Shown in pieces: positions 4,734 through 54,191 of a DNA stretch of 64,000 bases. How positions within the stretch are numbered: the first letter of the stretch is position 1; every line of letters starts with the position of its first letter. Where the stretch lies: IMG/VR virus record IMGVR_UViG_3300044712_002668, positions 62,001 to 126,000 of that record, one strand, 5' to 3'. The notes beneath the pieces are model-generated. The model did not search any database. It was not told the DNA's origin and worked only from the letters and a program-made list of their open reading frames with translations. The position numbers and the translations under genes are program-made.

Positions 4734-5096
4734 ATGGGAACTACATATATTTTTGCAAATCCAGGTCAAGTTGTACGTTTGGCTGTTCAAACTGTTGATG
4801 GGTATGGTAACCGTGCAGATGGGTATGTTCCGGTAGTTCAAAGCGTTTTGTTCCCAGACCTGTCTCCAGCTTCTAGCTATCCTTTAAATATGACAAGGAT
4901 TGATACCGGGTTTTTCGTTCATGGTGTTCAAATCCCTTCCGGCTCAACTTCTGTAGGAACTTACCTCATAAGTATTTATTATCAAACTGATTATACTTAT
5001 CCTGATGGCTATCAGGATGGCACACACCCTGTCTGGGAAACCTTTGCCATCCAAGTAGCTAAACCATTTGGTAATACCAGCGTTTCCCCTATTTGA
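4734..5096 (+). CDS. Small Ig-like putative virion protein with 3 DGY motifs
   Basis: Beta-strand pattern resembling the N-terminal domain of 6370..7269; VDGYGNRADGY and PDGY. Confidence 0.55.
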   Translation: MGTTYIFANPGQVVRLAVQTVDGYGNRADGYVPVVQSVLFPDLSPASSYPLNMTRIDTGFFVHGVQIPSGSTSVGTYLISIYYQTDYTYPDGYQDGTHPVWETFAIQVAKPFGNTSVSPI

Positions 5097-6315
5097 GTAT
5101 TGTAAGATACTCTGAAGAACGCGTTGTGGCGGTATATAACCAGCGTCTGTAGGTGTCATCATTTACAGGGGCTGGTTTTTCATTGTATAATATGACGTTG
5201 TCAGCTTGTGAGCCTTGCATCTTATGCACGGTAAGCGCATAACCATAATCAAACAATAATCCAACCTCGCTCCAATGCATTACATACATTCCAAAGGGCT
5301 CCAACTCCGAAAATGCTTTGAAAGTCTTTGGAAACCCAAACTGATGCTTGCAAATGCGTTTTGATTTTGTCTCAAAATCCTCAAATGGAAATCTTACCTT
5401 GAAATCATAATAATGATTCTCTACCTCCATAGCGGATTCTAATAAAAATCCACGATAACCATTGTATATTGGGGTTTTTCTATTCGAAGAGTTTCTTAAA
5501 CAGATTACAACATCATTTGTTACCGGATGTTTACTCTCATGCCCAAATATCATTTTCCGTATAACGGAATTCAATCTATTACGGGTACTGTTGGTGTAAC
5601 AAAGAACGGCATTGTTTAATACATCTTCAGGTTTTATGTTTTTCTTGAATGTCCTAGACAAAACATTGGAACATTCACTCCGTCCTAATATTTTCACATA
5701 CTTAGAGCTTTCGATATTAGGAATTTTTCCAGTTTCTCTAATTCTCATAGAGAGATTTATGATTGGATTTGATTCTGCTTGGCGGTGGATTTTTTCTAGT
5801 TTGATATCTGGAGATCCCATCAAATTGAAATTACCATCTATAGGTGGTAACTGTCCATGATCACCAATAGCCAGAATAGGTTTACCATAAGAAGCTAAAT
5901 CATTGAAGATATCCTGAGAAACCATAGAAGCCTCATCGATAACGATGATATCGGTTTCAAGCATATCTTTTTTCATCCAATGGATAACTTCACCATCTTC
6001 ATTTTCTATTGGGGAATATATTAGGCGATGAATAGTTCCACAATAATGTTTATCTACTGATACGCCTGATTCTGAAAGTTTTTGCCTTATTACAGATGAG
6101 GCTTTTCCAGATAAGGCACAAAAAGCAAATCTTATTGCTGTTTCAAATGATTTTGCAATAATAGATATTACAGTGGTTTTACCTGAGCCAGCGTAACCGG
6201 CAAAAGTCAGTAAATCTGAACTTTTCTGAGAAGAAACTACTTTCTTTCCTGTAGCCAACCATTCTGCAATCAAGTCAAATGCTTCTTGTTGATCTTTAGA
6301 TAGAGTAATATTCAT
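5089..6315 (-). CDS. dda: SF1B helicase, Dda/RecD2-like
   Basis: Walker A GYAGSGKT, DEASMV, GDHGQLPP, HRQA, YALTVHKMQGS, YTATTR. Confidence 0.9.
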   Translation of the reverse strand: MNITLSKDQQEAFDLIAEWLATGKKVVSSQKSSDLLTFAGYAGSGKTTVISIIAKSFETAIRFAFCALSGKASSVIRQKLSESGVSVDKHYCGTIHRLIYSPIENEDGEVIHWMKKDMLETDIIVIDEASMVSQDIFNDLASYGKPILAIGDHGQLPPIDGNFNLMGSPDIKLEKIHRQAESNPIINLSMRIRETGKIPNIESSKYVKILGRSECSNVLSRTFKKNIKPEDVLNNAVLCYTNSTRNRLNSVIRKMIFGHESKHPVTNDVVICLRNSSNRKTPIYNGYRGFLLESAMEVENHYYDFKVRFPFEDFETKSKRICKHQFGFPKTFKAFSELEPFGMYVMHWSEVGLLFDYGYALTVHKMQGSQADNVILYNEKPAPVNDDTYRRWLYTATTRSSEYLTILK

Positions 6316-6369
6316 ATTTAGGGTAATACCCTATCGAGTATTACCAGACCTCTCGACACTGAAGTAAAA

Positions 6370-7269
6370 TCAATACAGTTGTCTCTGTCTGAGAGTTCTC
6401 AAGCGCCTGAATTGTGGGCTTGCCCCAGCTACGAAAGACAATACTCCAAGACCTAACGGACTAGGACGCATATTTACCTTTATTAGTTTTACTTTTTCCC
6501 ACAAGTTATCAAATTCTTTCTGGTATTGGTTCATAAGCATATCAGAAATTGTAGGTGGAGTAAAACTGATACCATTATCCTGTATCTGGAATTCTCTACC
6601 TCTTTCGATCAATGCTTGAGCACCAATAGAGTACACAAAAGCAGCTTGAACGAATACGTCATGAAACTGTTCAATGATTGGTGTATCTTCAAAAGTAAAA
6701 TATGTAAATGTTGGAGTTTCGTTGAATAAAGATAAACCTCTTGCTATAAAGGTTACCAACTCATCTACTGTAAAAATATCACAATCTTTATAGATCTTGT
6801 TTCCATATTCATCTGTAGTTGGGCGTTTACCTTGACTCTTCAATCTTGCTCTTAATGATTTCAAGATATTGTTTATATTACAGATAGCTATTTGTGTATA
6901 ATTAAATCCTGGGTCATCTCCGAGATGTTTGTAGCCATCAGTGTTCAAAGCTGGAACTTGTGTAGTGCCAACTTCAAAATTGAACTCACCAATTACTTGA
7001 AAACCTTCTAGAGTACCTTGCCATACATCTTTCCAGACACCTAGAGCTGGAAATAAACCAACGCTATAAAGAAATTGATACTCACCAACACCAATTTTCA
7101 TTACACCCTGGGACGTGGGGCCAATAGCTACACCTCCACTAGGTTGAATAACAGACACTAATGGAAAGGAATCCAAGTCAGCAGGATTACCATCCGAATC
7201 ACGAAATTTGGCTCTCAGGGCAACAGTATCCCCTGGTTGTATCATAGCAGATCTGGGGTTGGTACTCAT
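6370..7269 (-). CDS. Putative head-tail connector/neck protein (Ig-like N-terminus plus helical C-terminus)
   Basis: Likely start MSTNPRS at 7269; Ig-like N-domain; helical C-domain ending in basic RRLRTLRQRQLY; structural context. Confidence 0.45.
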   Translation of the reverse strand: MSTNPRSAMIQPGDTVALRAKFRDSDGNPADLDSFPLVSVIQPSGGVAIGPTSQGVMKIGVGEYQFLYSVGLFPALGVWKDVWQGTLEGFQVIGEFNFEVGTTQVPALNTDGYKHLGDDPGFNYTQIAICNINNILKSLRARLKSQGKRPTTDEYGNKIYKDCDIFTVDELVTFIARGLSLFNETPTFTYFTFEDTPIIEQFHDVFVQAAFVYSIGAQALIERGREFQIQDNGISFTPPTISDMLMNQYQKEFDNLWEKVKLIKVNMRPSPLGLGVLSFVAGASPQFRRLRTLRQRQLY

Positions 7270-7319
7270 ACTTATATACAAAGATATTCGCCATCGGGGC
7301 ATAAATTGGCTTCTTAAAG

Positions 7320-10015: not shown

Positions 10016-11614
10016 ATGGTTTGTTCTGTTCCTGTAAAATTTCTTTTTTATAACCCAATACTACAAGGTACTAGAACCGTAAATGCTACCGGGGATGGTT
10101 ACTCCATCTCTTTAAGTTGGTATAAAGCTGCCATTTCACCTCCATATTATAAATTGTATTATAATATATATTATTCTTCTTTTCAAGAATCTGTTTTTAC
10201 TGAGGGTGTGAAATTTATAGCTCCATCAACAATAGATCAGGTATTGTTGGAAGGTATATTCAAACCAGGAGATATTTATTTCTTTGCGGTTAGACCTACA
10301 GGGTTTGAACCTAACACGTTTTTATTTGATTCCTTACCAGATGCCGGAAATGGTTTGAAAATCTATCCTGAGTCATTGTTGGCGGATACAATCACGGCTA
10401 CAGATACTATTATTCCATTGATTGATGTAACTTCATTCCCTCCATATGGTTTGATACAAATCGGTTATGAAGCAATAAAGTATTCTTCAGTTGATTTGGT
10501 AAATAACTTATTGATATTATCATCTGTAGCGGATCGTGGTGTATACGGAAGCACCCCAAGAATACATACACCGGATGGATATGATGGATCTTTATATCAT
10601 AATCCTTTGGTTTATATGTTCAAAGGTTTTGAGGATGGAAATATTTCTATTGGTTTGGCTGAAAACAAGTTCAAAGAACAATATGCCTACACCAACACTG
10701 ATGGATACAGAGACAGACAGGATATACTGACATCTGATAAAGATGTTACTATAGTTGAAAATTCAAATGATGGTTTTCCGATATTTGACTATGCAGGATG
10801 GAGAAGAACTGATCCTGCTGATATGTTAGCTGGTAAATGTATTGGCTCATATTATGGTGGGGAATACGGATGTGCAGATGGGTATGATAGTGATGGTAGG
10901 ATTCGTGGGCTTAGTTTTCAGGATATAAATAATCAACGTCAAGAGGTGTTGTTAAACGTTACTGGAGAGCCTGTAGTTCTTTTCAAGAGAATGTGGAAGG
11001 GCAAGACATCAAAACAATATGACTCATCCCGTGAGAACACCATTTATAGGGGTTTTGATAATTATGGTACAGAATTTGTAAGTGGTTATGAACAATATTT
11101 CAATTCAAGACGTTCTGATGGTAGAATCATGGTAAGGTTCGGGCCAACGAAAGAGAATTATGAGCGTCAGGAGCCTGGTATTGAAAATGTATTCGTTCCT
11201 AATTGTTGGACATTGGTTACTCCAGCTTTGAAGGATGGAGATTTTATCATTCGTTTCAATGAAGATGGAAGCGAAGAGTGGAGATATGAGGTTCTGGATG
11301 TGGATAGGAACAGAACGGTGCTGTTGGAAAGCGGAGCACAGAAGTTTACAGTTTCCAGAGTGAGAAAGACAGATCCAATTTATCAAGTCAGGGCAATACG
11401 TGATACCAGTATGTTCCCTAAGGAATTATTGACTGGAGTTGGAAGCGCTGGGAAATTGTTGCCTCATTTGCATAGAATTGTGGTTAATGAAGGAATTTTG
11501 ACTGTATCACAAATTAATCAAATGACATCAATATCAAATGGGCACAATCATGCAATAGTCAATGGTGTGGTACAAACAGTTCTAGGACATACTCATAGTA
11601 TCATCTTACCATAA
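10016..11614 (+). CDS. Putative virion neck/head-completion protein with FN3-like N-terminus and His-rich C-terminus
   Basis: ISLSW...YNIYY...YFFAVR FN3 pattern; 4 DGY; C-terminal HLH/GHNH/GHTH; GAGG RBS. Confidence 0.5.
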   Translation: MVCSVPVKFLFYNPILQGTRTVNATGDGYSISLSWYKAAISPPYYKLYYNIYYSSFQESVFTEGVKFIAPSTIDQVLLEGIFKPGDIYFFAVRPTGFEPNTFLFDSLPDAGNGLKIYPESLLADTITATDTIIPLIDVTSFPPYGLIQIGYEAIKYSSVDLVNNLLILSSVADRGVYGSTPRIHTPDGYDGSLYHNPLVYMFKGFEDGNISIGLAENKFKEQYAYTNTDGYRDRQDILTSDKDVTIVENSNDGFPIFDYAGWRRTDPADMLAGKCIGSYYGGEYGCADGYDSDGRIRGLSFQDINNQRQEVLLNVTGEPVVLFKRMWKGKTSKQYDSSRENTIYRGFDNYGTEFVSGYEQYFNSRRSDGRIMVRFGPTKENYERQEPGIENVFVPNCWTLVTPALKDGDFIIRFNEDGSEEWRYEVLDVDRNRTVLLESGAQKFTVSRVRKTDPIYQVRAIRDTSMFPKELLTGVGSAGKLLPHLHRIVVNEGILTVSQINQMTSISNGHNHAIVNGVVQTVLGHTHSIILP

Positions 11615-13964: not shown

Positions 13965-13973
13965 TGGAATAAT

Positions 13974-19805: not shown

Positions 19806-19814
19806 AACTCTAGG

Positions 19815-19843
19815 AGTCTAACCTACCTCATCCTACTTGTCAA
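19815..19843 (-). promoter_or_regulatory. Sigma70-type promoter for the lipoprotein gene
   Basis: Minus strand TTGACA-N17-TAGACT, 9 nt before the ATG at 19805. Confidence 0.75.
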
Positions 19844-22352: not shown

Positions 22353-22437
22353 GCATATCCGCACATATATTTTAGACCGGTTCTTGTTAATACAACACGT
22401 AATAAGTACACATAAGAATAGATTAGGAGATTTTACT

Positions 22438-25624: not shown

Positions 25625-25665
25625 TAACAGCTGATATATAATGTGCTTATAAAGGGAGTTAGCAC

Positions 25666-26343: not shown

Positions 26344-26662
26344 GCAACAATTCTATTATGACATGTTTTTAGAACGTGGAATATTACCCGGTGACCAATT
26401 CTATGAGGATATTAACCCATATTTAAAGAGATGGTTATTCGAGGCATGGGCTTATAAGAGAGAAAGGGAATATACAGAGAAACGTTCTCTAGCTATTCTT
26501 GTAGGTTCATTCCATAATCCAGAAGCAGCGCAAAAGATGGTCAAAGATGAGAACCCTGATGTATCAATTACAAGCGATGAATGGGAGCAATCATCTGAGA
26601 TGTTATTGACAGAGCTGCCAAAGGAGAAGAAGAGCCGTCGAAAACGCAAAATTATAGAGTAA
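26327..26662 (+). CDS. Second tail assembly chaperone segment (T-like; possibly a frameshift product)
   Basis: Overlaps the previous ORF in the +1 frame; GTG start without an adjacent SD. Confidence 0.5.
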   Translation: MVQEPEQQFYYDMFLERGILPGDQFYEDINPYLKRWLFEAWAYKREREYTEKRSLAILVGSFHNPEAAQKMVKDENPDVSITSDEWEQSSEMLLTELPKEKKSRRKRKIIE

Positions 26663-26665
26663 AAT

Positions 26666-28900: not shown

Positions 28901-28923
28901 TCTGCATAAGTTAACATATATGC

Positions 28924-29856: not shown

Positions 29857-29873
29857 AGATATAAAGGTATAGT

Positions 29874-44300: not shown

Positions 44301-44567
44301 GTGACATCTGGATCTGAGAATTCAAGTACAACAATACAACAAAACGTATATGATGCAATTGTTAGTTCATTGAATGCTACTCAGCTTGGAACAACTGTAG
44401 ATAGCTCAGACCTTATAAATACAGCATATACAATCACAGGGGTTGATAGAGTAAGAGTTATATATTTCAATAAGACTGGAAATACAGGAAGTGTATTAAG
44501 TATTTCGGCAAACAGTAATCAATATCTTCAAGCTGGAAGCATTACAATTAATATGGAAAGCAGATAA
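41331..44567 (+). CDS. Baseplate J-like wedge protein (gp6/gp47 family) with insertions
   Basis: GSDLDALASNFGAVR, FNGGSAPESD..FKNR, GTSAGY, GGKVDIY. Confidence 0.82.
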   Translation: MVRIRSVNDITLNIIDFYRTAQTQLDLKPGQVARDLLVDGPAVQISNLYDELYRVQDAQSLAISLGSDLDALASNFGAVRGQGSTSTGTAIVTFNAIDADIPINQGELVIASNGASFSVNTSFTVSVVNKNTYRAVASKYRADLDFVGISDQYAVEVAVTATTTGTTSNIAKYNLNTTTIAGASGVTNAAAFNGGSAPESDTVFKNRLLGIFSGSNTGTSAGYKDIVLSDPEVVDALVVGPGDPLMTRDGTVTVENPDGSYTIVSEGTGGKVDIYAYGFRLVQNVDSYIYYDKSNQNDTTNAANNFVLGQIASDANKTVSKKRVDDIQNGTVPNQPVINIISVSGSLSGSNFVQQTTNSLGVSSGNYTLLKDTGAYAGSPWGFDSLHWTDDHIRDYVENETKGSFNGQDPLGFTDVSSIPSVKQDIQIINENSVVSSTDRTSIQLAHYPVSNVSRVFNQTTGERYVISNQNPDGSGSLNETGRIIISGNTLPAVSDILQVDYIWNYSYDPSFDYDNKVTSDNPRTVTDSIDWGYSNAVRREESIVVTSGSQKVVQVTHPISSVISVNTFTGETATVTLVSDRLAIFVGSLVLNVISIIRNSDGAELFHTNAENGSFSGFTVFLPTDTVAKIGDSVSVRYNASDIFTVSGLSGSFSSNTITISSASTVTAGTIVECNYIANITQIVPTITLPSLPVIKSGNYFTTGTQTIGVQPVTNIYSSNVVQKNLRTAPTHLRLAITGSISPGVITVTGSTVLGIFDGVFVVTSSGLTHNLSTLVKSALGLNSNQSVPSTVSVIKLVTFKKVDTDNNLNVLSTIHTYDINGYYLKDNSYVKSESVADSTLSTTQVKLPSTSGNTANSPIIGDKIQVTFYIVKTSDSENISFGKSGSLYTNKTFSYVDSIAISSGFTSTESQSATITVYPQNQPAQGSRYSATYDYIAPKQNERITINYNNNGVISDNTFAIERARPIGHDVLVKQAIGVSVDATLAVVVTSGSENSSTTIQQNVYDAIVSSLNATQLGTTVDSSDLINTAYTITGVDRVRVIYFNKTGNTGSVLSISANSNQYLQAGSITINMESR

Positions 44568-47500
44568 TGTCAAATCTAAACATAGTAAATATTGTACCAA
44601 CCAACAGTAGGACTATAAACGCAAAATTTTCGGATCCTGTAACTCCTTTATTGGGTACCGAAAACGTTGTTGTAACTTCTACTGTTTCAGGGGTTCCAGA
44701 TCCTAAAGTATTAGGTATTTATGTAAATGAAAATATCGTTCTGGTGTATACCCTTCCATTGACACCTTATGCAAAATATACAATAACCTTTCAATCAACT
44801 CCAAATTTAAAAGTACAAGATAGTTCTGGAACAAAGTTTCTTCTTGAAGATGGAATTTACAACGTATCAAAATTCATAGGTCCTGAGGACCCTGACAATC
44901 CGATACGTGATATCTTGGTTTCAAATCTTCAACAAAATGTTTATGATCTAACTCCTGGTACATTGGTAAGAACAATACTTGATCAATTGGCTACCAATTT
45001 TTCAAAGGTAAACCACGATATATACCAGGCCAAGAATGAAAACTATCTTACCTTGCTTATTCAAGATGAACAAAAAACTCGTGGTTTTGGCCCATGGGAC
45101 AGGTTGAACCAAGAAGGCGCTTATGAGGTTATAAGGGTTGGTTTAACAGAAACAAATGCCAATTTGCCTGGAGCTATAACTTTTACAAGCTTTCCAAGAG
45201 ATCCTATTACCTTACAAGGTGTAACAGTTCAAAATGAAACCCTTACATTCGGAAGCGGATCTGGCACATATGATAAACAAACTCTTACAGTAAAAAATAA
45301 TCCTGTAACCAGATTGACATCAGTTCAAATTAATTACTCTAACGGAAGTTCTTTTGTATATAATATAAACCAATATGGTTATAGAATATTGAATGCAAAG
45401 TATGATTCTACATATGGACGACCATATTCTTTATTGAGTGACAATCAATTTGAACTCAGTGATGATTTGTTTGATTTGCCAACCTTTGTTGCTCCTGGTG
45501 GTAATGACACTATAGTTGTAACATATGAGTATAAACTTTTAAGTAGAATTGTTACAGAGGATTCTGTTACGGTAACTCAGGTTCTATCGGCTGTACGTGA
45601 GCCGGCACCAGCAGAAGCTACCTTATTCTCAATTAAGAATGCTCCGGTTGTTACAAGTGCTGGTAAAGATGTTACAAGTGCTGGTATCCAGTTTTTGGAT
45701 CCTTATTCTACCACACCTTTTAGAAGTACGCACCCAGCGTTTTTATATGAAATCCCTTATAGGGAAGGTGGTTTGCCAAAGCTTCCTGGCCAATATGCCG
45801 TTGACTATACTACTGGCAGAGTTTTTGTTTATGGAGCCCAAAACAATGATGGTACAGGGTTCTTCCCACCAGCAATGACATATTATTACAAAGATACCTT
45901 TGTAAGCAAACTAGACTATACATATGTACCAGATCAGTATGATTTGGTAGCATCTCCTTTAAGAGAATTGATTGGACAAACAGCAACCATTTCATTCAAC
46001 TATGATCAGGTGCTTACACCTGGCGTAGACTATGATGCAACTGTTCACCAAGAAGTTCTTAATGAAAGAATTGGAAACAGACTTATCAGTTCAAATACTT
46101 TGGTGGTAGCTAACGCTCCTGTAACCGATGTTTTTAGAATATATAATGAAACAACTGGTGAAATATATAATGCTACCAGATTCAGTTTTAACAAGATATC
46201 ATTTTCATATAACAAATCACCTAGAATATTTGACACTACAAGAGAGCGCGCATCATTTCAGGATGTAACTAGTGAATCATTGGTTTTGGCAAAAGAATTT
46301 CTAAGCACTAGTGGTTATAGAATATTCAAGTTTGTTCTGAATAACAACAAGATAGTATCTGGCACTGAAGACCTGATAGGTAGCAGCTATAATACAAGTG
46401 CGTTTTTCAGTAGACAGGATGTGTTTGCTCAAGAGGTATACTATGACTCACAAGAGCTTACTGAAACTATAAACGTAGCAAGATTGGTTATCGGTCAATA
46501 TCAGATCAATTACCAAGATGGTGTTGTGTATGTTGCTGTTTCTCCAGCCCAAACACCAAGCGTTGGAACGATATCCTATAAAAAACTAGCTGTATCTCCA
46601 GCAAACCCACATGTTATATCTGTAAGCAATATATACTATAGTATAAATCAAAACACAGGTGTATCAAAACAGCTTGATTACAGTGGTTTTGATGATGGTG
46701 TCATATACCCATCTGAATATGATTTATCAGATGAAAGGTTTACAAATAAAAATACGTTAGCCCCTTACATTTATGACACTGGAACTATTACTGTTACCGA
46801 TGATATCAAAGCATTACGTGGCGTATATGATGCGTATGATTTGAATAACAGTGTAATACCAACAAACTTTGCAGAGAACGCTACCTTTAGCGCAAATGTT
46901 ATTACACTATCTCCTCAGGGGATTATGAAGTCTGGACAATTTATTGTTAGCGGCGCTCTAACAATTACCGTTCCATATTTATCTCCTGGTATTGTATTGG
47001 GTTCGGTATTCAGCGTAATACGTATCACTGACAATCAGCAATTAGTAGCTGGTGCAAGTGTAAATACAAATACCATTACACTTTCCCCTAGCAGTGGTGT
47101 TGTAGCTGGTGATGTAGTAAATGTAATATACTATGTTGTTATGAATGGGGCGGCTACCCCGGTAGTTGATTATAATAAAGGTGAATATTATATTGACTAT
47201 ACATATCTTGCAGATGAAATATTGGTAAGCTATGAATACGGTGACAACGTAATAGACTTCAGACAAAATGAGACGGTTTCTCCTGGTAGCACATACTATG
47301 TTTCTTATAGAGTAGGTGCTCTTAGAAATGCATTGTTAAATAACTTTGCAGCATTGATAAAGATCCCAGAGTTACAAGCTTTCGACTCTTATCTTGATAG
47401 GGAGGTATATAGAGACATTCTCATAGGGGCTTTACAAACCTTCACTAAGGGTCCAACAAACCCAGCTTTCAAACAACTTGTTTCAAGTGTTACAAAGATA

Positions 47501-50500
47501 GAACCACAGATTACAGAAGATCTGTTCAATGCCTGGTCTTTGGGTGTAAGTTATTTGAAGCCAAATGGAACAAGTGTTTCAGGAACACCACAACTTACAG
47601 TTGGCAAATATGATCAAGGGTTAGCTATCAGAAAAACAGGGGATGCAGTATCTTTTCCAGTATCAAACAATTTGAGATTGGAAGAGGGTACCTTGGAAAT
47701 GTGGGTTATACCTGATTGGGATGGTGTAGACAATGATGCTTCAATTACTTTCTCTGTATTGAAAAACTCTCTTCCTATAACATCAAGCTCTGTCTTTATA
47801 GGATCTAGAAGTTACAATCCTGAAATCATTGATGGATCTTTTACGCTAAACAGAAACGATAGCAATAGTCCTGAAGGTTTGCCTTCTGCTATATTTTTGA
47901 ATAATAGCGGATTGTTTATATATTATGATAAAGATAATAAACAATGGAAGATGCTGGCTAAAGAACCAATGGGTTCGGCTGCATCCTATACAGGAAGCTT
48001 GACATCAACTGGTGAATTTTATAATGTTGGATTTATTCCTGGTGTTGGTGAGCTTGATGATGTTTTGAGATCATCATCTCAAACGTTGGATTTTGAATTC
48101 AACTTCAGCCCATCAGATCCTCAGGATGGATATGATGGATATGTTGATGGGTATGTAACAGGATATAAATTTGATGGTATTCAGTTGATGTCTGATAATG
48201 ACCATTATATCTTTGACTTTGGTAAGACAGAGAATACTAATAGATTCTCGCTGTACAAAGATGGTCGTGGATACATTGTATTTGAGGTATGGGACCGTGG
48301 AGGGTTCAGTAATGGAGTAAAACCTGAGAGGCGAAACGTATATCGTGTTAGTTCAGATATAAGGGATTGGACGGCAGGATCATCTCACCATGTTGCCGTG
48401 TCATGGATACTGAACTCATCTGATAGAAGAGATGAGATGCATTTATATATTGATGGATTTGAAACTCCAAATATTATGCGTTATGGTAATATACCTGATA
48501 TTGCCTCTACAAACAGATTCCGCACTATTGTTCCAGAACAGGTATTGGGAATAGTGCCAAAAAATACTATTGCAGGAAATGACTTACAGATATTTACAGG
48601 ATCAAATGTAGTAGAATCAGCCTCTGTTGATTTTCAAGCTGGTGGAATTTTGCCAGGTGATTTGATAGAGTTACAGGAACAAGGTTTAGGTACATATACC
48701 ATAACATATGTTTCTGGTAATCAGTTAACTATCAGCTCTATAATGCCGTTTACATTATCAGATGCAAGGTTCTCAGTAAACCCAACAAGCTTTGTGGTAT
48801 ATACAGAAATTGATATTTATAAAAACATTGCGGTATTTATCTCTACCGGTCCTAATGACCCTGGTACAGAAATCCCAGGAGTAAGGGCTAACATTCCTGG
48901 TTACAGCATTGAAAGAAATACTCTTAATCAAAGAATTCTTAAAATATTAGGAGATGCAAATGCTGGTGACACCGTATTGATCAAGCCATTGGGATTGAAT
49001 CATCGTAGATGCAGAGAAAGATTATATCTATGGAATGATCAGTCTATAATAAAAACTGCATTACCTCCACCTATCAACTTGGATGATGTTGTATTGAGAC
49101 CGGTACAATTGCCACTTACTCCGATAGGGCCAAGTAATGCAACCATTATAGGGATGGATTTTGATATAACATTTACAAGTGTTAGCCAGCCTAGCAACCC
49201 TCTTGAGGGAAGGCATTTGGAAGTAAGGATCACTGGAGAGAATACATCCTTTACAACTCCTACAGTGGTTACTATAAATGGTACTTCAACTGGTGGTGTA
49301 ACAGAGACACTTACATTTACATCTGCAGTAAAACAAAGTACTTCTTATAAATGGCAAACCATTACAAGTGTTCATGTAGTAACAACCCCAATTGTGCTGA
49401 CACAAAATTGTGTATCCATAGAAATAAAGGAATTGTACTCTGTTACAAACCCTGATGGAAATACTATTTATCCAGTAATCAGGTTTGCTTTCAAAACTCA
49501 AGGTGGTCTATCCCTTTCTGGATCAGGTACAACACTGGTTACAGATGTCAATGGATACTTTGCAGACTCTGATGTTGGTAACTTGTTAGAAATAACCGCG
49601 CCACCAGCGGTGGCAGGGTTGTATGAGATAGTTCAAAAAATTGATAACTACAATGTTGTATTGAATATACCTACACCTACCTCATTTACAAATGGAAAAT
49701 ATTCAATATACAATATAAGCATTGGTAGAAGTGGTTTTCAGAATGGTTTCATGTTTTTTGAAAGAGCTGGTTTTACCAATGTACCATTCTATATTCCTCA
49801 GGGGTATTTTGATATAGACTTTGCGGCATGGCTGGAGGTACCATTTGATCCTATAGATCAAACCGCTTATATTGGAAACGATATAACATTACAAAAACCA
49901 GCCAATGCTGTAATAGATGAATTTAGAATTTTGAATTATCAACTCACAGATACAAGGGTAGGTGAAACGGTTGATGTTCAATCAATAACTACAAATGCTG
50001 TTGAGTTTGCTCCATTCACAAATGATCCTCAAACACTTACATTATTACATTTTGAACAATTACCACCTATAAATGATACAGAATTTTACATCTATGCTAC
50101 AAAGGAGTATGTACAATCTGCAACCAGTGTAAATTCAAAATTTGGAACATGTATTGTTATTAAAGACAAGGGATTGGTATTTGATAATGATGGAACCTTG
50201 AATACCAGCAGTGATGGTATGGTTGAATTCTGGGTAAGCCCAAGATTTGATACATATAATGACCCTATACCAAGAGTATATTTTGATGCTGCAGCGTCTA
50301 TTGTTGAAAACAACACCAGTTTAACAAAAGAAATTGTAAAGGTATCTGGAAAGATAAACAAAGTACTATCTGTCAAAATGGCAAATGATAGTGTAACAGA
50401 TTATTATGGTGGTGGTGTAATAGGCCCAGATCGTCAAACCATATACTTGAACAAACCTTTACCATTCCAGCAAAGCCCTGTTGTCATCACTTATGTTTCT

Positions 50501-51217
50501 ACTGGAACCCAGGGTGATAGGCTGACGATATATAAAGATAGGGATGGTTTTATAAATCTATCCGTTCTGGCTGGTGGAAGTTTATTTGAAACCCGTCAAC
50601 CTGTATTCTGGCCAAGGGATACATGGCACCGTGTCAGGGCTTCATTCAAGTTTAACCGTTCAGATCATAAAGATGAGATAAGATTGTTTGTGGATGGTGA
50701 AGAGAAGGGTATTTTGATGTTCGGCGCTCCAAACGTTCTATTCGGAGAAGGAACAAGCTTTGGACAAAACTATACTGGTGTTACGAATCAAAAACTTGTT
50801 GCTGATATAAACTTTCTTGACACTATCAATCAGTTTTCTATTGGTCAAGACTTTACAGGAAACTATGGGGCTCAGGCTAGGTTTGATAATATAAAAATAA
50901 GTAACAGAAGTATTGATCCTCTTTTGGTTGGAAACCAACCTAAAGATGTGTATTTCAATACAAATTCTGATTTCATATATCCATCAATCTCTGATGCGTT
51001 CACTACCTTCTTGATGGATTTTGATCAATTGGTACAAAAAAATACAGATTTTGCTATGGTAATAGATCCCGTCTCTGGTATTTTCAATTTTACCCTGAAT
51101 ATCATTGATTCTTTTGACATAGTGATAGATAATTCTAAGGTCCAGAATATCCTTGAAGCTATGATAAAGGTTCTGAAGCCAGCGGTATCAAAGGTTCAAA
51201 TTAACTATATAAAGTGA
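44567..51217 (+). CDS. Very large baseplate wedge protein (gpI/gp7-like) with LamG/concanavalin-like domains
   Basis: YRDILIGALQTFTKGPT wedge motif; EGTLEMWV, HHVAVSW, LYIDG, IDEFRI, WHRVRASF LamG patterns; C-terminal IKVLKPA. Confidence 0.65.
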   Translation: MSNLNIVNIVPTNSRTINAKFSDPVTPLLGTENVVVTSTVSGVPDPKVLGIYVNENIVLVYTLPLTPYAKYTITFQSTPNLKVQDSSGTKFLLEDGIYNVSKFIGPEDPDNPIRDILVSNLQQNVYDLTPGTLVRTILDQLATNFSKVNHDIYQAKNENYLTLLIQDEQKTRGFGPWDRLNQEGAYEVIRVGLTETNANLPGAITFTSFPRDPITLQGVTVQNETLTFGSGSGTYDKQTLTVKNNPVTRLTSVQINYSNGSSFVYNINQYGYRILNAKYDSTYGRPYSLLSDNQFELSDDLFDLPTFVAPGGNDTIVVTYEYKLLSRIVTEDSVTVTQVLSAVREPAPAEATLFSIKNAPVVTSAGKDVTSAGIQFLDPYSTTPFRSTHPAFLYEIPYREGGLPKLPGQYAVDYTTGRVFVYGAQNNDGTGFFPPAMTYYYKDTFVSKLDYTYVPDQYDLVASPLRELIGQTATISFNYDQVLTPGVDYDATVHQEVLNERIGNRLISSNTLVVANAPVTDVFRIYNETTGEIYNATRFSFNKISFSYNKSPRIFDTTRERASFQDVTSESLVLAKEFLSTSGYRIFKFVLNNNKIVSGTEDLIGSSYNTSAFFSRQDVFAQEVYYDSQELTETINVARLVIGQYQINYQDGVVYVAVSPAQTPSVGTISYKKLAVSPANPHVISVSNIYYSINQNTGVSKQLDYSGFDDGVIYPSEYDLSDERFTNKNTLAPYIYDTGTITVTDDIKALRGVYDAYDLNNSVIPTNFAENATFSANVITLSPQGIMKSGQFIVSGALTITVPYLSPGIVLGSVFSVIRITDNQQLVAGASVNTNTITLSPSSGVVAGDVVNVIYYVVMNGAATPVVDYNKGEYYIDYTYLADEILVSYEYGDNVIDFRQNETVSPGSTYYVSYRVGALRNALLNNFAALIKIPELQAFDSYLDREVYRDILIGALQTFTKGPTNPAFKQLVSSVTKIEPQITEDLFNAWSLGVSYLKPNGTSVSGTPQLTVGKYDQGLAIRKTGDAVSFPVSNNLRLEEGTLEMWVIPDWDGVDNDASITFSVLKNSLPITSSSVFIGSRSYNPEIIDGSFTLNRNDSNSPEGLPSAIFLNNSGLFIYYDKDNKQWKMLAKEPMGSAASYTGSLTSTGEFYNVGFIPGVGELDDVLRSSSQTLDFEFNFSPSDPQDGYDGYVDGYVTGYKFDGIQLMSDNDHYIFDFGKTENTNRFSLYKDGRGYIVFEVWDRGGFSNGVKPERRNVYRVSSDIRDWTAGSSHHVAVSWILNSSDRRDEMHLYIDGFETPNIMRYGNIPDIASTNRFRTIVPEQVLGIVPKNTIAGNDLQIFTGSNVVESASVDFQAGGILPGDLIELQEQGLGTYTITYVSGNQLTISSIMPFTLSDARFSVNPTSFVVYTEIDIYKNIAVFISTGPNDPGTEIPGVRANIPGYSIERNTLNQRILKILGDANAGDTVLIKPLGLNHRRCRERLYLWNDQSIIKTALPPPINLDDVVLRPVQLPLTPIGPSNATIIGMDFDITFTSVSQPSNPLEGRHLEVRITGENTSFTTPTVVTINGTSTGGVTETLTFTSAVKQSTSYKWQTITSVHVVTTPIVLTQNCVSIEIKELYSVTNPDGNTIYPVIRFAFKTQGGLSLSGSGTTLVTDVNGYFADSDVGNLLEITAPPAVAGLYEIVQKIDNYNVVLNIPTPTSFTNGKYSIYNISIGRSGFQNGFMFFERAGFTNVPFYIPQGYFDIDFAAWLEVPFDPIDQTAYIGNDITLQKPANAVIDEFRILNYQLTDTRVGETVDVQSITTNAVEFAPFTNDPQTLTLLHFEQLPPINDTEFYIYATKEYVQSATSVNSKFGTCIVIKDKGLVFDNDGTLNTSSDGMVEFWVSPRFDTYNDPIPRVYFDAAASIVENNTSLTKEIVKVSGKINKVLSVKMANDSVTDYYGGGVIGPDRQTIYLNKPLPFQQSPVVITYVSTGTQGDRLTIYKDRDGFINLSVLAGGSLFETRQPVFWPRDTWHRVRASFKFNRSDHKDEIRLFVDGEEKGILMFGAPNVLFGEGTSFGQNYTGVTNQKLVADINFLDTINQFSIGQDFTGNYGAQARFDNIKISNRSIDPLLVGNQPKDVYFNTNSDFIYPSISDAFTTFLMDFDQLVQKNTDFAMVIDPVSGIFNFTLNIIDSFDIVIDNSKVQNILEAMIKVLKPAVSKVQINYIK

Positions 51218-51221
51218 TGAT

Positions 51222-54191
51222 ATGATGACAACACGAAACTCAGTCTCTATTATACAAAATCGTTGGTATGACGGTCAACGCGTTGATCAGCAGGATTTAG
51301 TTACCGATCAAACCAGGAATGTGGGTACAGATGCGGCGATTATAAATAATCACTTTGGCTCAGGTGTTCTACCTAATGCAAGTTTACCTGTAACAGTTTT
51401 CGATACAGATAACCTTCTTCCAGATCAGGTAGCATTGATAGCTTCTGGTGATTTTGACGGTACAGGTTTAGAACCTATTGGTCAACCAAGTGATACCAGC
51501 AATGGTAATCAGTTATCTGTTGAGTTGATGGATTCAGATTTAAACGGACCATCTACTGCATTTGGTAGAATGAGTACAAAGGTACTTATAATAGGTCTTG
51601 ACTTTCAAGGATCTCTTCAGTACGAAAGGTTTTACTTCTATAAGAAAGAAAAACAAGTTTCTCAAAAACATTATGCAAAAGTGTTATGTGTTTTCTTCAA
51701 TGATTTTATAGGTAACACAAACTGTTCAAGGGATTTGGGCGGCAGGGTTGTAATCAAAGAAGCTAACAGTTTTGAGTTGTCCAGGGATCCTGTCATGACA
51801 GCTCAGGATACCCAACCAAACATATTTTTTCGTGATTTCAAGATATCAACATTTTCCGGTGGAACAAATCCTACGGTTACATTGTATCAAGCATTGCAGG
51901 CTGGTATAGGAAACCAATATTCAGTTGATGGTTTAAATATTACCACCACCGCTCTTGAAAACATCTATTTGCCTTCTGGGGATGTAACTACAAAGATAGG
52001 GCAAAAATTTCTAGCTCTAACAAATAACATTCAAAAAATAAGCTTACTTTTAGGTGTTGACCAGGATACCACAACTACTACTGAACATTGGTTTGATTGG
52101 AGTGGAGAGCTTATTGTAAGTGTTTATGCCTTACAAACAACTGTTTCTTCACCAAGCGATCTTGTACCAACTTTAGCTATAGAGTTTGATCCGGCTGCAC
52201 AGCCAATTACTCAGTTCAGTTTGAATCAACAATCATTAAGGGATTTAGGTTATGTACTAAACAATGTTGCTCAACCTATAGATCTTGTTTTTAGTGCTTC
52301 CCCTCTGGGTAGTTCTACAAACTCTGTAATAACGGTTGGTCAATATTATGCGGTTGTTATTAACAGGGCAGGAGATGCAAGTACTGGTAGTATTTTTGCA
52401 GCAGCAGGGGCCACTTCAAACTCTGATACCCGTGTAAGCATCTACTCAGGATTATGGACAGATATACCACAAGAAAGCTTATGGTTTCAGGTATGGACAG
52501 ATGCTGCAAAAGTATCTGATGGACAGGGTTATGATTCTGGTAATGGTATTCAAATACCTAAAACAATACAGAACAGCAGTGGTGCCTATGTTGATTACTC
52601 ATTTGGTTTGAATCAATTTTCTGATACAGGGCATAACACTTTAAATACTGCAATTATAGAAGCTGTCTTGACTCAAAGTCAGCAAGAACAAGATGAAAGA
52701 ACTGGTAGTCCAGTTTATTCTAGACAGCAATATACACCATCACTTAGTTTTGTTACAAACTCAACGCTTCAAACAATCCAAGAAACTGGTAATCCTTTAA
52801 TCATTGGAAGTACAAGGGATACAAACCCTATTAGTAACTATTCTGTAACCGGAACCCAACCATATCCTGGTTTGGTTAAAGGAGATACCTATACCCTTGT
52901 AGCTCCAGATCCATCCGTAATAGCACAAAACCTTATAGGTAGCAAATTGATACCAAATGATGATTGTGCAGGTTTGGATTACCGTATTATGAAAGTGTCA
53001 ATCTGTACCGATGGGTATGGTGATGTAAATGGTGATGGGGTTATTGATGAAGCAGATGCCAATAGAGCTATTGCACTTATTGGCGAATCCCTTTCTTCAG
53101 CATCGACACAACAAAAAATTATTGATGGTTACATATCTACTCTTGAAATATTAAGAGCTGACGTTAATGGTAATGGTATTGTTGATGCTTATGATGCTCA
53201 GTTGATTGCATCATTCATTGCCAGAGATATTTCAACATTCCCATACGGAAGATCCTTTCAGCATGTTGAATTTCAGGTTCAACAGAGTATAGGAAGATAT
53301 GATGGATACTTTGATTGTGATGGGTATATCAGACTAGACGGTTATATTGGGCAGAACAAAATAGACCCTGCAAGTCTTGGTATTTATGCTCAAATTTATG
53401 ATGGGTATATTATACCACCACAAATGGATAAGGCAGATCCTGCTTGGACAACGGTACCATATGTACCTGTACCATTCCTGATTACACCTCAGGCATTCTG
53501 GCAAGATTATCAAGTTCAATTCAGTAGTGCTACAAGAATGGTACCTGCTGTATTTACATCTCAGAGCGGAGGCAGAGTATCAACCTCGACTGTTTGTACA
53601 AGCCCAAGCATAACTAGCTGTAGTAATGTTACTGATATTATAACACAGACAGATCCTGGTAAAAATGATATCTTTATTCCAGATAACTTGATTATAAGAG
53701 GAAACATTTTAAATGTTGATGGTACTTTTTATAAGCAAGATTTTGAGGTAAAGCATTTCGTCTTGGAGCTTCCACCAGAAGTATTCTCACAAGCATCTAT
53801 TGATGTTTTCCATAAATTGGTAGCAGATGCAGGGGATGGTTTTACATCTGCTGGATATCCTGCAATGAGATATAGTGATTGTACCACTGTAGGGTTGGAT
53901 GCTTTGATTTATAACAGACTTCGTTTTGGAGTATCTATTCAATCAATAGTACCCAACCTTGATGGTTATAGTGTCGCTGATGGTTATGGCGTAATTGTTG
54001 ATGACTTGATTGGTATATACATGGATCCTATTTATGGAATTATGACAATTACAGCAAAGGATCTTGACGAGGATTTGACCAAACCAAACTTGATTACAAA
54101 GATCGAGATTGTGGTGTATGCCAAGAAAGCTGGATGGCAAAATACTACTCAAATAATTCCACCAAATCAAATCATGGGACTTGTTACTTGA
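51222..54191 (+). CDS. Baseplate/fibre-attachment protein with a dockerin-like EF-hand pair and 8 DGY motifs
   Basis: N-terminal WYDGQRVDQQDL..DQ; GDVNGDGVIDEADA and ADVNGNGIVDAYDA. Confidence 0.55.
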   Translation: MMTTRNSVSIIQNRWYDGQRVDQQDLVTDQTRNVGTDAAIINNHFGSGVLPNASLPVTVFDTDNLLPDQVALIASGDFDGTGLEPIGQPSDTSNGNQLSVELMDSDLNGPSTAFGRMSTKVLIIGLDFQGSLQYERFYFYKKEKQVSQKHYAKVLCVFFNDFIGNTNCSRDLGGRVVIKEANSFELSRDPVMTAQDTQPNIFFRDFKISTFSGGTNPTVTLYQALQAGIGNQYSVDGLNITTTALENIYLPSGDVTTKIGQKFLALTNNIQKISLLLGVDQDTTTTTEHWFDWSGELIVSVYALQTTVSSPSDLVPTLAIEFDPAAQPITQFSLNQQSLRDLGYVLNNVAQPIDLVFSASPLGSSTNSVITVGQYYAVVINRAGDASTGSIFAAAGATSNSDTRVSIYSGLWTDIPQESLWFQVWTDAAKVSDGQGYDSGNGIQIPKTIQNSSGAYVDYSFGLNQFSDTGHNTLNTAIIEAVLTQSQQEQDERTGSPVYSRQQYTPSLSFVTNSTLQTIQETGNPLIIGSTRDTNPISNYSVTGTQPYPGLVKGDTYTLVAPDPSVIAQNLIGSKLIPNDDCAGLDYRIMKVSICTDGYGDVNGDGVIDEADANRAIALIGESLSSASTQQKIIDGYISTLEILRADVNGNGIVDAYDAQLIASFIARDISTFPYGRSFQHVEFQVQQSIGRYDGYFDCDGYIRLDGYIGQNKIDPASLGIYAQIYDGYIIPPQMDKADPAWTTVPYVPVPFLITPQAFWQDYQVQFSSATRMVPAVFTSQSGGRVSTSTVCTSPSITSCSNVTDIITQTDPGKNDIFIPDNLIIRGNILNVDGTFYKQDFEVKHFVLELPPEVFSQASIDVFHKLVADAGDGFTSAGYPAMRYSDCTTVGLDALIYNRLRFGVSIQSIVPNLDGYSVADGYGVIVDDLIGIYMDPIYGIMTITAKDLDEDLTKPNLITKIEIVVYAKKAGWQNTTQIIPPNQIMGLVT

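What the first reader, a model, noticed from the sequence alone, without database searches (positions are those of the whole stretch)
4797..53987. Asp-Gly-Tyr (DGY) motif stamped across unrelated outer virion proteins: candidate sequon for a phage-encoded virion modification system
Seen: hand count of about 32 DGY in 10 non-homologous proteins. Counts: 4734 (3 in 120 aa), 6370 (1), 10016 (4), 13974 (5), 21540 (1), sheath (3), chaperone (1), 37127 (3), 44567 (3), 51222 (8). A rough expectation for ~20,000 aa, assuming ~6% D, 7% G and 4.5% Y, is about 4; the control DGF occurs only about 9 times. Codons vary (GAT GGG TAT, GAT GGC TAT, GAT GGT TAC, GAT GGA TAT, GAC GGT TAT), so selection acts on the peptide, not on a DNA repeat. 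I found none in the enzymes (ligase, IscS, helicase, HAD, GTs) or in the inner tail parts (tube, tape measure, tube initiator, hub, spike). Inference: DGY is a short linear tag on exposed loops, read by a modifying enzyme or a decorating protein. The best in-window candidate is Tyr O-glycosylation by the GT cluster that starts right after the most DGY-rich gene. Tyr-linked glycans are known from some bacterial S-layers and glycosylated virions from some actinophages, but I know of no described DGY sequon.
Basis: partly seen in the sequence, partly recalled or inferred. Interest (0 to 1): 0.93.

Follow-up and report, generated by a model that had tools for sequence, protein, structure and literature searches.

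The report
Asp-Gly-Tyr tag on phage tail proteins
A family of giant bacteriophages carries the three-residue motif Asp-Gly-Tyr in loops of its outer tail proteins about 16 times more often than chance and has almost none in its other proteins, which suggests an undescribed tag read by some enzyme, possibly the phage's own sugar-adding enzymes.

Summary
There are 32 DGY in the same 10 proteins, against 3.8 expected. That is 4.4-fold over a DG/GY Markov expectation, and the maximum was 14 in 2000 local-composition shuffles. The signal is at the peptide level: 32 in-frame DNA matches against 7 in the other frames.

It is a property of the clade. In relatives at 35-65% identity the same orthogroups hold 1159 DGY against 71 expected, at about 100 different alignment columns. 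NGY, EGY, DSY, DAY and DGW are depleted. Unrelated viral proteins show 13 against 11.7.

Inner-tail proteins (0 against 5.2) and the glycosyltransferases (2 against 13) are depleted. Most sites are lineage-specific and lie in indel-rich or low-confidence loops. The three sheath sites were converted from DAN/DAY/xGx loops. Two relatives have lost the enrichment.

Enrichment in one protein set, avoidance in the other and rapid turnover fit a motif read in trans. I favour a modification sequon, with Tyr O-glycosylation by the conserved GT4-GT2-GT2 core next to the fibre genes as the leading candidate. That link is untested. All informative relatives carry both features, and the contigs of the DGY-poor lineages end before the glycosyltransferase region. 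No literature describes such a motif.

The parts
4734..5096 (+). 120-aa protein of unknown function with 3 DGY (nt 4797, 4818, 5004). Its orthologues carry 2-5 DGY in about 120 aa.
   Evidence: no Pfam or PHROG hit
6370..7302 (-). 310-aa protein with a weak head-tail connector PHROG hit; 1 DGY (nt 6931-6939).
10016..11614 (+). 532-aa protein of unknown function with 4 DGY. Its orthologues carry 5-8 each (orthogroup O/E about 28).
13974..19178 (+). 1734-aa protein upstream of the sheath with 5 DGY. Site 274 is invariant in 11 orthologues. Orthologues carry 3-11 DGY, spread over about 30 different columns.
21540..22352 (+). 270-aa protein with 1 DGY (in a DGYGN context), conserved in 15 of 17 orthologues.
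22384..24921 (+). Tail sheath (probable true start 22438). Three DGY lie in the non-conserved insertion domain and are conserved in 17/20, 15/20 and 20/20 relatives. More distant sheaths have DAN/DAY/DSY or xGx at the same loops.
25666..26343 (+). 225-aa protein after the tube gene with 1 DGY, conserved in 9 of 18 orthologues.
37127..39175 (+). 682-aa protein in the baseplate region with 3 DGY.
41331..44567 (+). Baseplate wedge protein (gp6-like). The window copy has 0 DGY, but its orthologues are carriers (66 against 9.5 expected).
44567..51217 (+). 2216-aa fibre-like protein (Big_5, Laminin_G_3) with 3 DGY packed at aa 1187-1196. Orthologues carry 0-16 DGY at 41 different columns.
51222..54191 (+). 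989-aa baseplate or receptor-binding-like protein with a dockerin module (aa 599-681) and lectin-like folds; 8 DGY. All 120 close homologues carry 4-10 DGY.
24944..35096 (+). Inner tail block with no DGY: tube-like 24944, then 26327, 26666, 28924 and 29874. (The carrier 25666 lies within this span.) The window copies and all orthologues have 0 DGY, against 5.2 expected.
54991..57802 (+). Conserved glycosyltransferase core directly after the fibre genes: GT4/GT1 (54991-56151), GT2 (56280-56975) and GT2 (56963-57802). It keeps this position in relatives down to 35% identity.
57756..63933 (.). Variable part of the cluster: 57756-58739 (unknown; one orthologue has a very weak GT9 hit), GT2 58688-59494, 59491-61497 (unknown N-terminal part; one orthologue has a weak GT1 hit), GT10-like 61480-62418 (minus strand), GT2 62417-63196, GT11 63199-63933. 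Orthologues of the cluster proteins carry 2 DGY against 13 expected.

Best explanation
DGY is a sequon-like linear tag. In this jumbo-myovirus clade, an Asp-Gly turn presenting a Tyr is selected for in flexible loops of the outward-facing tail, baseplate and fibre proteins. It is selected against in inner-tail proteins and enzymes. I infer that a clade-specific factor recognises the bare tripeptide in trans and modifies the Tyr. The factor I commit to as most likely is the conserved late glycosyltransferase core (GT4 54991, GT2 56280, GT2 56963), elaborated by the variable GT2/GT10/GT11 enzymes. On this view it O-glycosylates DGY tyrosines in the cytoplasm before or during assembly and gives the tail a glycan coat. 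What is shown: the enrichment, its specificity, the avoidance elsewhere, the turnover, the loop context, and the conserved position of the glycosyltransferases.
For: The motif is exact. In four orthogroups DGY occurs 424 times against 25.6 expected, at 99 columns, more than any other tripeptide. NGY, EGY, DSY, DAY and DGW have O/E of 0.39, 0.13, 0.41, 0.52 and 0.47, and DGF has 2.4. In carrier orthogroups 36% of all DG are followed by Y and 55% of all GY are preceded by D.

Unrelated viral ORFs give a baseline of 13 against 11.7.

The motif is avoided elsewhere. Glycosyltransferase-cluster enzymes have 2 against 13.0 expected (2 against 8.2 for representatives below 60% identity) and inner-tail proteins have 0 against 5.2. 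In non-carrier orthogroups only 4 of 543 DG are followed by Y, while DGF is not depleted.

The sites turn over. Of 101 DGY columns, 62 occur in fewer than 10% of sequences, and 45% lie in indel-rich stretches against 23% of all columns. When the motif is broken, Y is the residue that differs.

The three sheath sites correspond to DAN/DAY/DSY and xGx loops in more distant sheaths, so they were converted to DGY independently.

Folding does not need the motif. DGY-poor relatives exist: L171 with 0 in 6272 aa, and L188/L233 with 0, 0 and 2, whereas the 58%-identical sister L237 has 0, 7 and 7.

The structural contexts vary. In the 51222 model, five sites lie in loops with pLDDT below 50 and three lie at the C-terminal ends of a strand or helix. 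The sheath sites lie in loops of at least five residues.

The GT4-GT2-GT2 core directly follows the fibre genes in nearly all of about 80 loci.
Against: There is no direct evidence of any modification. The glycosyltransferases give only generic family hits, and no solved relative or known protein glycosyltransferase family was matched. They could act on DNA, on lipid-linked glycans or on host polysaccharide.

Motif and cluster co-occur in all informative relatives, so the association is not discriminating. The lineage L178/L189 is DGY-rich but has other genes and only one weak GT1-like gene in the 7-9 kb after the fibre gene. A fibre with only 2 DGY (P0293) still has the cluster downstream.

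The depletion statistics treat related sequences as independent. Solvent exposure of the tyrosines was not computed. Tyr-linked glycosylation with a tripeptide sequon has no precedent that I could find.
Confidence: 0.35

Rival explanations
1. The motif is read in trans, but not by the glycosylation enzymes. DGY would be the recognition site for another clade-specific factor. Candidates are a different Tyr or Asp modification (sulfation, phosphorylation, nucleotidylation, oxidative cross-linking) or a docking site for a decoration, cement or assembly protein.
For: The same evidence applies as for a trans-acting reader: enrichment, avoidance, turnover and loss in sporadic lineages. Nothing ties the glycosyltransferases to protein acceptors. 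Adjacency of the glycosyltransferases is not universal.
Against: No candidate enzyme of these kinds was found in the window. The only conserved enzyme set embedded in the structural module is the glycosyltransferase core.
Confidence: 0.22
2. DGY is a ligand-contact motif acting in cis. A Tyr presented on an Asp-Gly turn would form many weak binding sites on the virion surface, for example for host polysaccharide. These sites would be multiplied and reshuffled by host-range selection. No enzyme would read them.
For: The motif is concentrated in proteins with lectin-like, Laminin_G and Ig-like folds and in loops. The sites cluster at spacings of 3-8 residues, which would give avidity. Turnover is high, as in receptor-binding loops.
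Against: This does not explain why DGY falls to about 0.1-0.25 of expectation in enzymes and inner-tail proteins of the same phages, while unrelated viral proteins sit at 1.1. It does not explain the strict exclusion of NGY, EGY, DAY and DSY. The motif also occurs in the sheath and in small proteins that are not expected to contact the host.
Confidence: 0.25
3. DGY is an ordinary structural turn. It would be a favoured beta-turn or capping motif of beta-rich extracellular proteins, partly inherited with Ig-like 'DxxGNP' loops and with dockerin calcium loops.
For: Sheath sites 1 and 3 align with D-A-N-G-N-P-type loops, and site 2 with a P-x-x-G-x-A loop, in distant sheaths. The Tyr of DGY597 is the dockerin Y-G-D-V-N-G-D-G tyrosine. 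All sites lie at the ends of strands or helices or within loops.
Against: Relatives fold the same loops with DAN, DAY, DSY or SGN, and whole sister lineages do without DGY. N-G turns are depleted rather than tolerated. No flanking context is shared and the secondary-structure settings differ. The baseline in other viral proteins is 1.1. The depletion elsewhere is unexplained.
Confidence: 0.1
4. The enrichment is an artefact. It would come from chance, amino-acid composition, a DNA-level repeat, low-complexity tandem repeats or a shared mobile domain.
For: Some sites are clustered, so the 32 sites form 23 clusters. Unrelated viral contigs do contain DGY-rich low-complexity repeats.
Against: Local-composition shuffles reach at most 14. 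The DNA pattern is specific to the coding frame. No homology links the carrier proteins. No period or extended consensus is seen. The signal is reproduced in more than 100 independent contigs.
Confidence: 0.01

Closest known systems
Chlorovirus (PBCV-1) major capsid protein glycosylation by virus-encoded glycosyltransferases
   Same: In both, a large dsDNA virus carries its own set of glycosyltransferases. In PBCV-1 the virion protein is glycosylated at sites that do not follow the cellular Asn-X-Ser/Thr sequon (PMC5408694). It is the nearest precedent for a virus with a private sequon.
   Different: PBCV-1 is a eukaryotic virus, the linkage is N-linked to Asn, it concerns the capsid protein, and it is shown experimentally. 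Here the virus is a phage, the presumed acceptor is Tyr in tail proteins, and nothing is shown biochemically.
Mycobacteriophage virion O-glycosylation (Che8-type)
   Same: Phage-encoded glycosyltransferases decorate structural proteins of the virion (as summarised in PMC12619734, its reference 45).
   Different: There the glycans are reported at the C-termini of the capsid and tail-tube subunits. Here the tube has no DGY in any relative, and the motif is scattered through internal loops of the sheath, baseplate and fibre proteins.
General O-glycosylation sequon of Bacteroidota, D-(S/T)-(A/I/L/V/M/T)
   Same: It is a three-residue acceptor motif that begins with Asp (PMC8550257). The glycans are fucosylated and the loci encode fucosyltransferases (PMC8698959). 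The phage cluster contains GT10- and GT11-like genes. Two of three MAG bins that hold relatives are Bacteroidota.
   Different: The acceptor is Ser or Thr at position 2, not Tyr at position 3. By general knowledge, that system acts on exported proteins outside the cytoplasm, whereas virions assemble in the cytoplasm. The host phylum of this phage is not established.
Tyr-linked S-layer glycans of Gram-positive bacteria (Paenibacillus, Thermoanaerobacter)
   Same: They show that bacterial systems can link glycans to Tyr on surface proteins (PMC2943079).
   Different: By general knowledge, transfer there is from a lipid carrier outside the membrane, with one or a few sites per protein and no DGY sequon described. 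The Pfam hits in the cluster were all glycosyltransferase families, and none was an oligosaccharyltransferase-type domain.
Gain and loss of N-glycan sequons in exposed loops of viral envelope proteins
   Same: The evolutionary signature is the same: a minimal motif appears and disappears at many non-homologous loop positions while the fold stays constant (general knowledge; compare).
   Different: Those sequons are read by host enzymes in eukaryotic cells.
Ig-like (Big-type) DxxGNP loops and dockerin calcium loops
   Same: Two or three sheath sites and two or three sites in 51222 occupy such loops.
   Different: These loops account for at most about 6 of the 32 sites. Even there the G-Y or Y is a clade-specific substitution.

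Membership tests
Enzyme-read glycosylation sequon | A short, position-independent motif is over-represented in the substrate proteins. | tested here: met
   Window O/E is 8.5. Carrier orthogroups have O/E 16 at about 100 columns, with no flanking consensus.
Enzyme-read glycosylation sequon | The acceptor residue lies in solvent-accessible loops. | tested here: inconclusive
   By DSSP and pLDDT the sites lie in loops or at the ends of secondary-structure elements, and the columns are indel-rich. Side-chain accessibility could not be computed.
Enzyme-read glycosylation sequon | The cognate transferase co-occurs with the motif across lineages and is absent where the motif is absent. | tested here: inconclusive
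   The GT core is present in nearly all DGY-rich loci. Contigs of the DGY-poor lineages end about 300 nt after the fibre gene. One DGY-rich lineage lacks an adjacent cluster.
Enzyme-read glycosylation sequon | A glycan is covalently attached to the acceptor residue. | not testable with these tools
   This needs mass spectrometry of virions or of co-expressed proteins.
Phage-encoded virion glycosylation (mycobacteriophage type) | Glycosyltransferase genes are encoded by the phage. | tested here: met
   Seven of the nine cluster proteins after 54991 have Pfam glycosyltransferase hits: GT4/GT1, four GT2, a weak GT10 and GT11.
Phage-encoded virion glycosylation (mycobacteriophage type) | The acceptor sites lie at the C-termini of the capsid and tail-tube subunits. 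| tested here: not met
   The tube-like protein has no DGY in 17 relatives. The sites are internal and occur in the sheath, baseplate and fibre proteins.
S-layer-type Tyr O-glycosylation | The locus contains a membrane oligosaccharyltransferase. | tested here: not met
   The Pfam and NCBIfam scans of the ten cluster proteins returned only glycosyltransferase families, and no oligosaccharyltransferase-type domain.
Ig-like (Big) domain DxxGNP loop motif | The site aligns with a D-x-x-G-N-P loop of a beta-sandwich domain. | tested here: met
   This holds for sheath sites 1 and 3 only. No Pfam Big hit falls on the sheath, so the domain assignment rests on motif resemblance.
Dockerin type I module | A Pfam match above the gathering score, with paired calcium loops. 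| tested here: met
   51222 aa 599-664 scores 36.4 bits against a cut-off of 22.9. Foldseek matches dockerins with probability 1.0. This explains only the Tyr of DGY597 and the DG of the loops.
Low-complexity DGY tandem-repeat proteins | Long periodic head-to-tail arrays, such as (x-D-G-Y-D)n. | tested here: not met
   Such arrays occur in the unrelated contigs L103 and L130. In the clade the sites are scattered or form clusters of 2-3 without a fixed period.

The most novel reading that the evidence does not exclude
A phage-encoded, cytoplasmic, Tyr-directed protein glycosylation system with a strict three-residue sequon (Asp-Gly-Tyr). It would coat the sheath, baseplate periphery and fibres of a widespread clade of jumbo phages with glycans. 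The sequon would be gained and lost in surface loops as N-glycan sites are in animal-virus envelopes, and it would be purged from proteins that must not be modified.
Probability: 0.3. Interest if true: 0.92.

Novelty: new variant of a known kind. Interest (0 to 1): 0.8.

Why it matters
If the tag is read by an enzyme, it would be the first defined sequon for a phage virion modification, and possibly the first tripeptide sequon for Tyr-linked glycosylation in any system. It would show that phage tails, like animal-virus envelopes, can evolve a modifiable surface by gaining and losing a minimal motif.

It would also give a sequence-only way to predict which proteins of uncultured jumbo phages are exposed on the virion. 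It would give a compact tag for engineering site-specific modification of proteins.

Even if the function is different, the finding stands. One virus lineage shows 16-fold enrichment of one exact tripeptide in one protein set and 4- to 10-fold depletion in another. That is an unusually clean signature of selection on a linear motif, and it is directly testable.

Tried and rejected
- **DNA-level repeat or methylation-type motif:** rejected. The pattern is frame-specific and uses varied codons.
- **Composition or local low complexity:** rejected by whole-protein and block shuffles and by the other orderings of D, G and Y.
- **Shared mobile domain:** rejected. BLASTP finds no similarity among the carrier proteins.
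- **Extended consensus or fixed period:** none found.
- **A general property of phage structural proteins:** rejected. The baseline O/E is 1.1. A scan of IMG/VR for three clustered DGY codons returned, outside this clade, only low-complexity repeats.
- **Isolated phages:** none is closely related. Only the C-terminal sheath core matches Eggerthella phage LE2-3 and Bacillus phage G.
- **Solved structures:** sequence searches for 13974, 10016, 37127, the GT4 and profiles of 59491 and 57756 found nothing.
- **The test on relatives without the cluster:** attempted through sheath representatives with no DGY (P0004, P0006, P0012, P0016), through the DGY-poor fibre lineage, and through a metagenome scan. 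The contigs were too short, their DNA was not held, or they ended just after the fibre gene.
- **Host assignment through the class-V aminotransferase:** nothing found.
- **Literature:** searches for a DGY motif found nothing relevant. The mycobacteriophage glycosylation paper could not be opened.
- **Link to the 'moraphages':** the clade may correspond to them (PMC12619734: Bacteroidota hosts, four core glycosyltransferase groups, Hsp20). This could not be verified.

Full report
**Observation.** I translated the 46 non-nested ORFs of the window (20,761 aa) and found exactly 32 DGY. The outermost codons are at 4797 and 53987. DGF occurs 9 times. The composition-based expectation is 3.8 (O/E 8.5, Poisson 3e-19). 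The expectation from the observed DG and GY dipeptides is 7.3 (O/E 4.4). DGY is the most over-represented of all tripeptides by ten orders of magnitude in P value. Shuffling each protein gives a mean of 3.9 and a maximum of 14 in 2000 trials. Shuffling only within 10-residue blocks, which keeps local composition, gives a mean of 5.6 and a maximum of 14. The other five orderings of D, G and Y occur 4-7 times each. The DNA pattern GAYGGNTAY occurs 32 times in the coding frame and 7 times in all other frames and the antisense strand together, with eight different codon triplets. Selection therefore acts on the ordered peptide. BLASTP among the window proteins shows no homology between the carriers.

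**What the window is.** The window is part of a 336-kb IMG/VR contig of an uncultured jumbo myovirus.
- Annotated parts are the sheath (22384), a tube-like protein (24944), a gp25-like baseplate protein (40832) and a gp6-like wedge protein (41331).
- Two large distal proteins follow. 44567 has Big_5 and Laminin_G_3 domains. 51222 has a dockerin type I module, and its model matches a phi812 baseplate protein and lectin-like folds.
- After them comes a run of nine glycosyltransferase-cluster genes from 54991 to the window end. Seven have Pfam glycosyltransferase hits: GT4/GT1, four GT2, a weak GT10-like hit and GT11.
- No isolated phage is closely related.
- Three relatives sit in MAG bins labelled Bacteroidales, Chitinophagales and Gammaproteobacteria. 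The clade may be the recently named 'moraphages' (PMC12619734), but I could not verify this.

**The enrichment belongs to a clade.**
- All 23 relatives fetched through the sheath (45-65% identity) show DGY O/E of 6-17 in the 20 kb around it.
- In four aligned orthogroups (sheath, 13974, 44567, 51222; 112,729 aa) DGY occurs 424 times against 25.6 expected. It does so at 99 different alignment columns, more than any other tripeptide; SSS, made of the commonest residue, has 75.
- The close variants are depleted: NGY 0.39, EGY 0.13, DSY 0.41, DAY 0.52, DGW 0.47. DGF is mildly enriched at 2.4.
- All 120 close homologues of 51222 in the large protein collection carry 4-10 DGY, 927 against 28 expected.
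- In the carrier orthogroups 36% of all DG dipeptides are followed by Tyr and 55% of all GY are preceded by Asp.
- Viral ORFs unrelated to the clade (84,819 aa) show 13 against 11.7 expected, so the normal ratio is about 1.
- A scan of IMG/VR for three clustered DGY codons found the scattered, multi-protein pattern only in this extended clade. Outside it, the hits were low-complexity tandem repeats of a different nature.

**Two classes of proteins.** Over all fetched relatives, the orthogroups of the ten carriers hold 1159 DGY against 70.9 expected. The wedge protein is also a carrier in relatives (66 against 9.5), although the window copy has none. In contrast, the inner-tail block (tube-like, 26327, 26666, 28924, 29874) has 0 against 5.2 expected. 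The glycosyltransferase-cluster proteins have 2 against 13.0. After thinning to representatives below 60% identity these become 0 against 3.4 and 2 against 8.2. In all non-carrier orthogroups there are 543 DG dipeptides, as many as composition predicts, but only 4 are followed by Tyr, while Phe after DG is not depleted. These sequences are related, so the P values overstate the evidence. Even so, the distribution is clearly bimodal: 16-fold enrichment in one set and 4- to 10-fold depletion in the other, against a baseline of 1.1.

**Evolutionary behaviour.**
- Some sites are old. The three sheath sites are kept in 17/20, 15/20 and 20/20 relatives, and site 274 of 13974 is kept in 11/11.
- Most sites are young. 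Of 101 DGY columns, 62 are present in fewer than 10% of the sequences. 45% of the columns lie in indel-rich stretches, against 23% of all columns.
- When a relative lacks the motif at a DGY column, D or G is retained in 23% of cases and Y in only 6%. The usual step is therefore Tyr switching on and off on an existing Asp-Gly turn.
- A library-wide profile search for sheath relatives showed that more distant sheaths have D-A-N-G-N-P, D-A-Y-G or D-S-Y-G at sites 1 and 3, and P-x-(A/S)-G-x-A at site 2. The three DGY of this clade's sheath are thus independent conversions of pre-existing loops. Other sheath lineages have acquired DGY at other positions.
- Two relatives have lost the enrichment. 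A 21-kb contig syntenic from 13452 to 29874 has 0 DGY in 6272 aa (L171). The second phage has 0, 0 and 2 DGY in its wedge and fibre orthologues, while its 58%-identical sister has 0, 7 and 7. Its lost sites now read DGI, FGL, DGK, DGT and DEY.
- The proteins evidently fold and assemble without the motif.

**Structural context.** The sheath model is poor overall (pLDDT 56) but reasonable in the insertion domain (72-85). There the three sites lie in loops of five or more residues between strands. The 51222 model is better (pLDDT 72, pTM 0.69). The clusters at 694/700/706 and 914/920 fall in segments with pLDDT below 50. Sites 597, 635 and 727 sit at the C-terminal end of a strand or helix. There is no common secondary-structure setting and no flanking consensus. 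The Tyr of site 597 is the usual Tyr that precedes the dockerin calcium loop. I could not compute side-chain accessibility.

**The glycosyltransferases.** A core of GT4-like, GT2 and GT2 genes (54991, 56280, 56963) follows the fibre gene in nearly all of about 80 loci. This includes relatives at 35-40% identity and the MAG-binned contigs. The remaining glycosyltransferases vary. The enzymes match only generic families and no solved structure.

The association with DGY could not be tested by contrast.
- Every relative with enough flank has both features.
- One DGY-rich lineage has other genes and only one weak GT1-like gene within 7-9 kb after the fibre gene.
- A fibre with only 2 DGY still has the cluster downstream.
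- All six assemblies of the DGY-poor phage end about 305 nt after the fibre stop. There is no glycosyltransferase start at the point where its sister phage has one 170 nt after the stop. This is suggestive but not conclusive, because insertions at that position occur in other lineages.

**Interpretation.** Chance, composition, DNA motifs, tandem repeats and a shared domain are excluded. An ordinary structural turn does not fit the evidence:
- relatives use other residues in the same loops;
- N-G turns are avoided;
- the settings differ from site to site;
- whole lineages manage without the motif;
- nothing in that idea explains the depletion in other proteins.

A ligand-contact motif acting in cis explains the loops, the clustering and the turnover. 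It does not explain the depletion, the strictness of the motif, or its presence in the sheath.

What I take as most diagnostic is the combination of an exact, context-free motif, repeated gain in flexible loops of one protein set, and avoidance in the rest of the proteome of the same phages. That points to recognition in trans by a clade-specific factor. I put about 0.55-0.6 on that general statement. The only conserved enzyme set embedded in the structural module is the glycosyltransferase core. I therefore commit to Tyr O-glycosylation as the single most likely mechanism (0.35). Another reader (0.22) and a cis-acting binding motif (0.25) are serious rivals.

**Comparison with what is known.** The nearest precedents are the following.
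- Chloroviruses: virus-encoded glycosyltransferases glycosylate the capsid protein at non-canonical sites (PMC5408694).
- Mycobacteriophages: glycans are reported at the C-termini of capsid and tube subunits (cited in PMC12619734).
- The Bacteroidota D-(S/T)-(A/I/L/V/M/T) O-glycosylation sequon (PMC8550257).
- Tyr-linked S-layer glycans (PMC2943079).

None of these has a DGY motif, and none places the acceptor in internal loops of sheath, baseplate and fibre proteins. Full-text searches found no description of a DGY motif in phages. I therefore rate the finding as a new variant of a known kind (virus-encoded virion modification with a private sequon). The kind itself is inferred, not shown.

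**Verdict.** Interest 0.8.

Noticed in passing
window 53016-53264 (51222 aa 599-681): A dockerin type I module sits inside a phage baseplate or receptor-binding-like protein. It scores above the Pfam gathering score, matches cellulosomal dockerins by fold, and is annotated in most of more than 100 homologues. Its partner, a cohesin-like surface on the virion or on the host, is unknown.
   Followed up: partly
window 21075-21443 (-): A small heat-shock protein (Hsp20) gene lies inside the tail structural module, on the opposite strand. It sits among a few small genes that vary between relatives.
   Followed up: no
window 61480-62418 (-) and 63199-63933 (+): These genes are GT10-like and GT11-like (fucosyltransferase families), which suggests that the phage builds a fucosylated glycan. 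Bacteroidota protein O-glycans are fucosylated (PMC8698959).
   Followed up: no
L233 12956-13260 (also L232, L188, L229): Six independent assemblies of the DGY-poor phage all end about 305 nt after the fibre gene. In its sister phage L237 the GT4-like gene starts 170 nt after the same gene. The tail of the contig holds a 60-aa ORF and a GC-rich hairpin, has no tRNA, and shows no similarity to the sister's glycosyltransferase region.
   Followed up: partly
L171 (JGI 3300033069 Ga0364485_11466): This relative is syntenic from 13452 to 29874 (sheath 40-45% identical) and has no DGY at all in 6272 aa. It is a natural control lineage.
   Followed up: partly
L103 and L130 (unrelated IMG/VR contigs): These contigs encode proteins made of long pentapeptide tandem repeats of the type x-D-G-Y-D. 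One 1711-aa ORF has 48 DGY, and four adjacent ORFs together have 41. Other contigs carry G/Y-rich GDGYG repeats. This low-complexity phenomenon is different from the scattered motif studied here.
   Followed up: partly
window, all ORFs: VSG is the second most over-represented tripeptide (30 against 8.4 expected).
   Followed up: no
window 59491-61497 and 57756-58739: Two conserved cluster proteins have no family assignment. The C-terminal third of 59491 looks like half of a GT-B fold, and one orthologue gives a weak GT1 hit; its large N-terminal part is unknown. One orthologue of 57756 gives a very weak GT9 (heptosyltransferase) hit.
   Followed up: partly
window 1945-2259 and 41331-44567: The window copies of these two proteins have no DGY, but their orthologues in relatives do: 4 in 316 aa, and 66 against 9.5 expected. 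The set of carrier proteins therefore differs slightly between phages.
   Followed up: partly
window 22384-22437: The sheath ORF begins at a TTG, 18 codons upstream of the Met at which all relatives start. The true start is probably 22438.
   Followed up: partly
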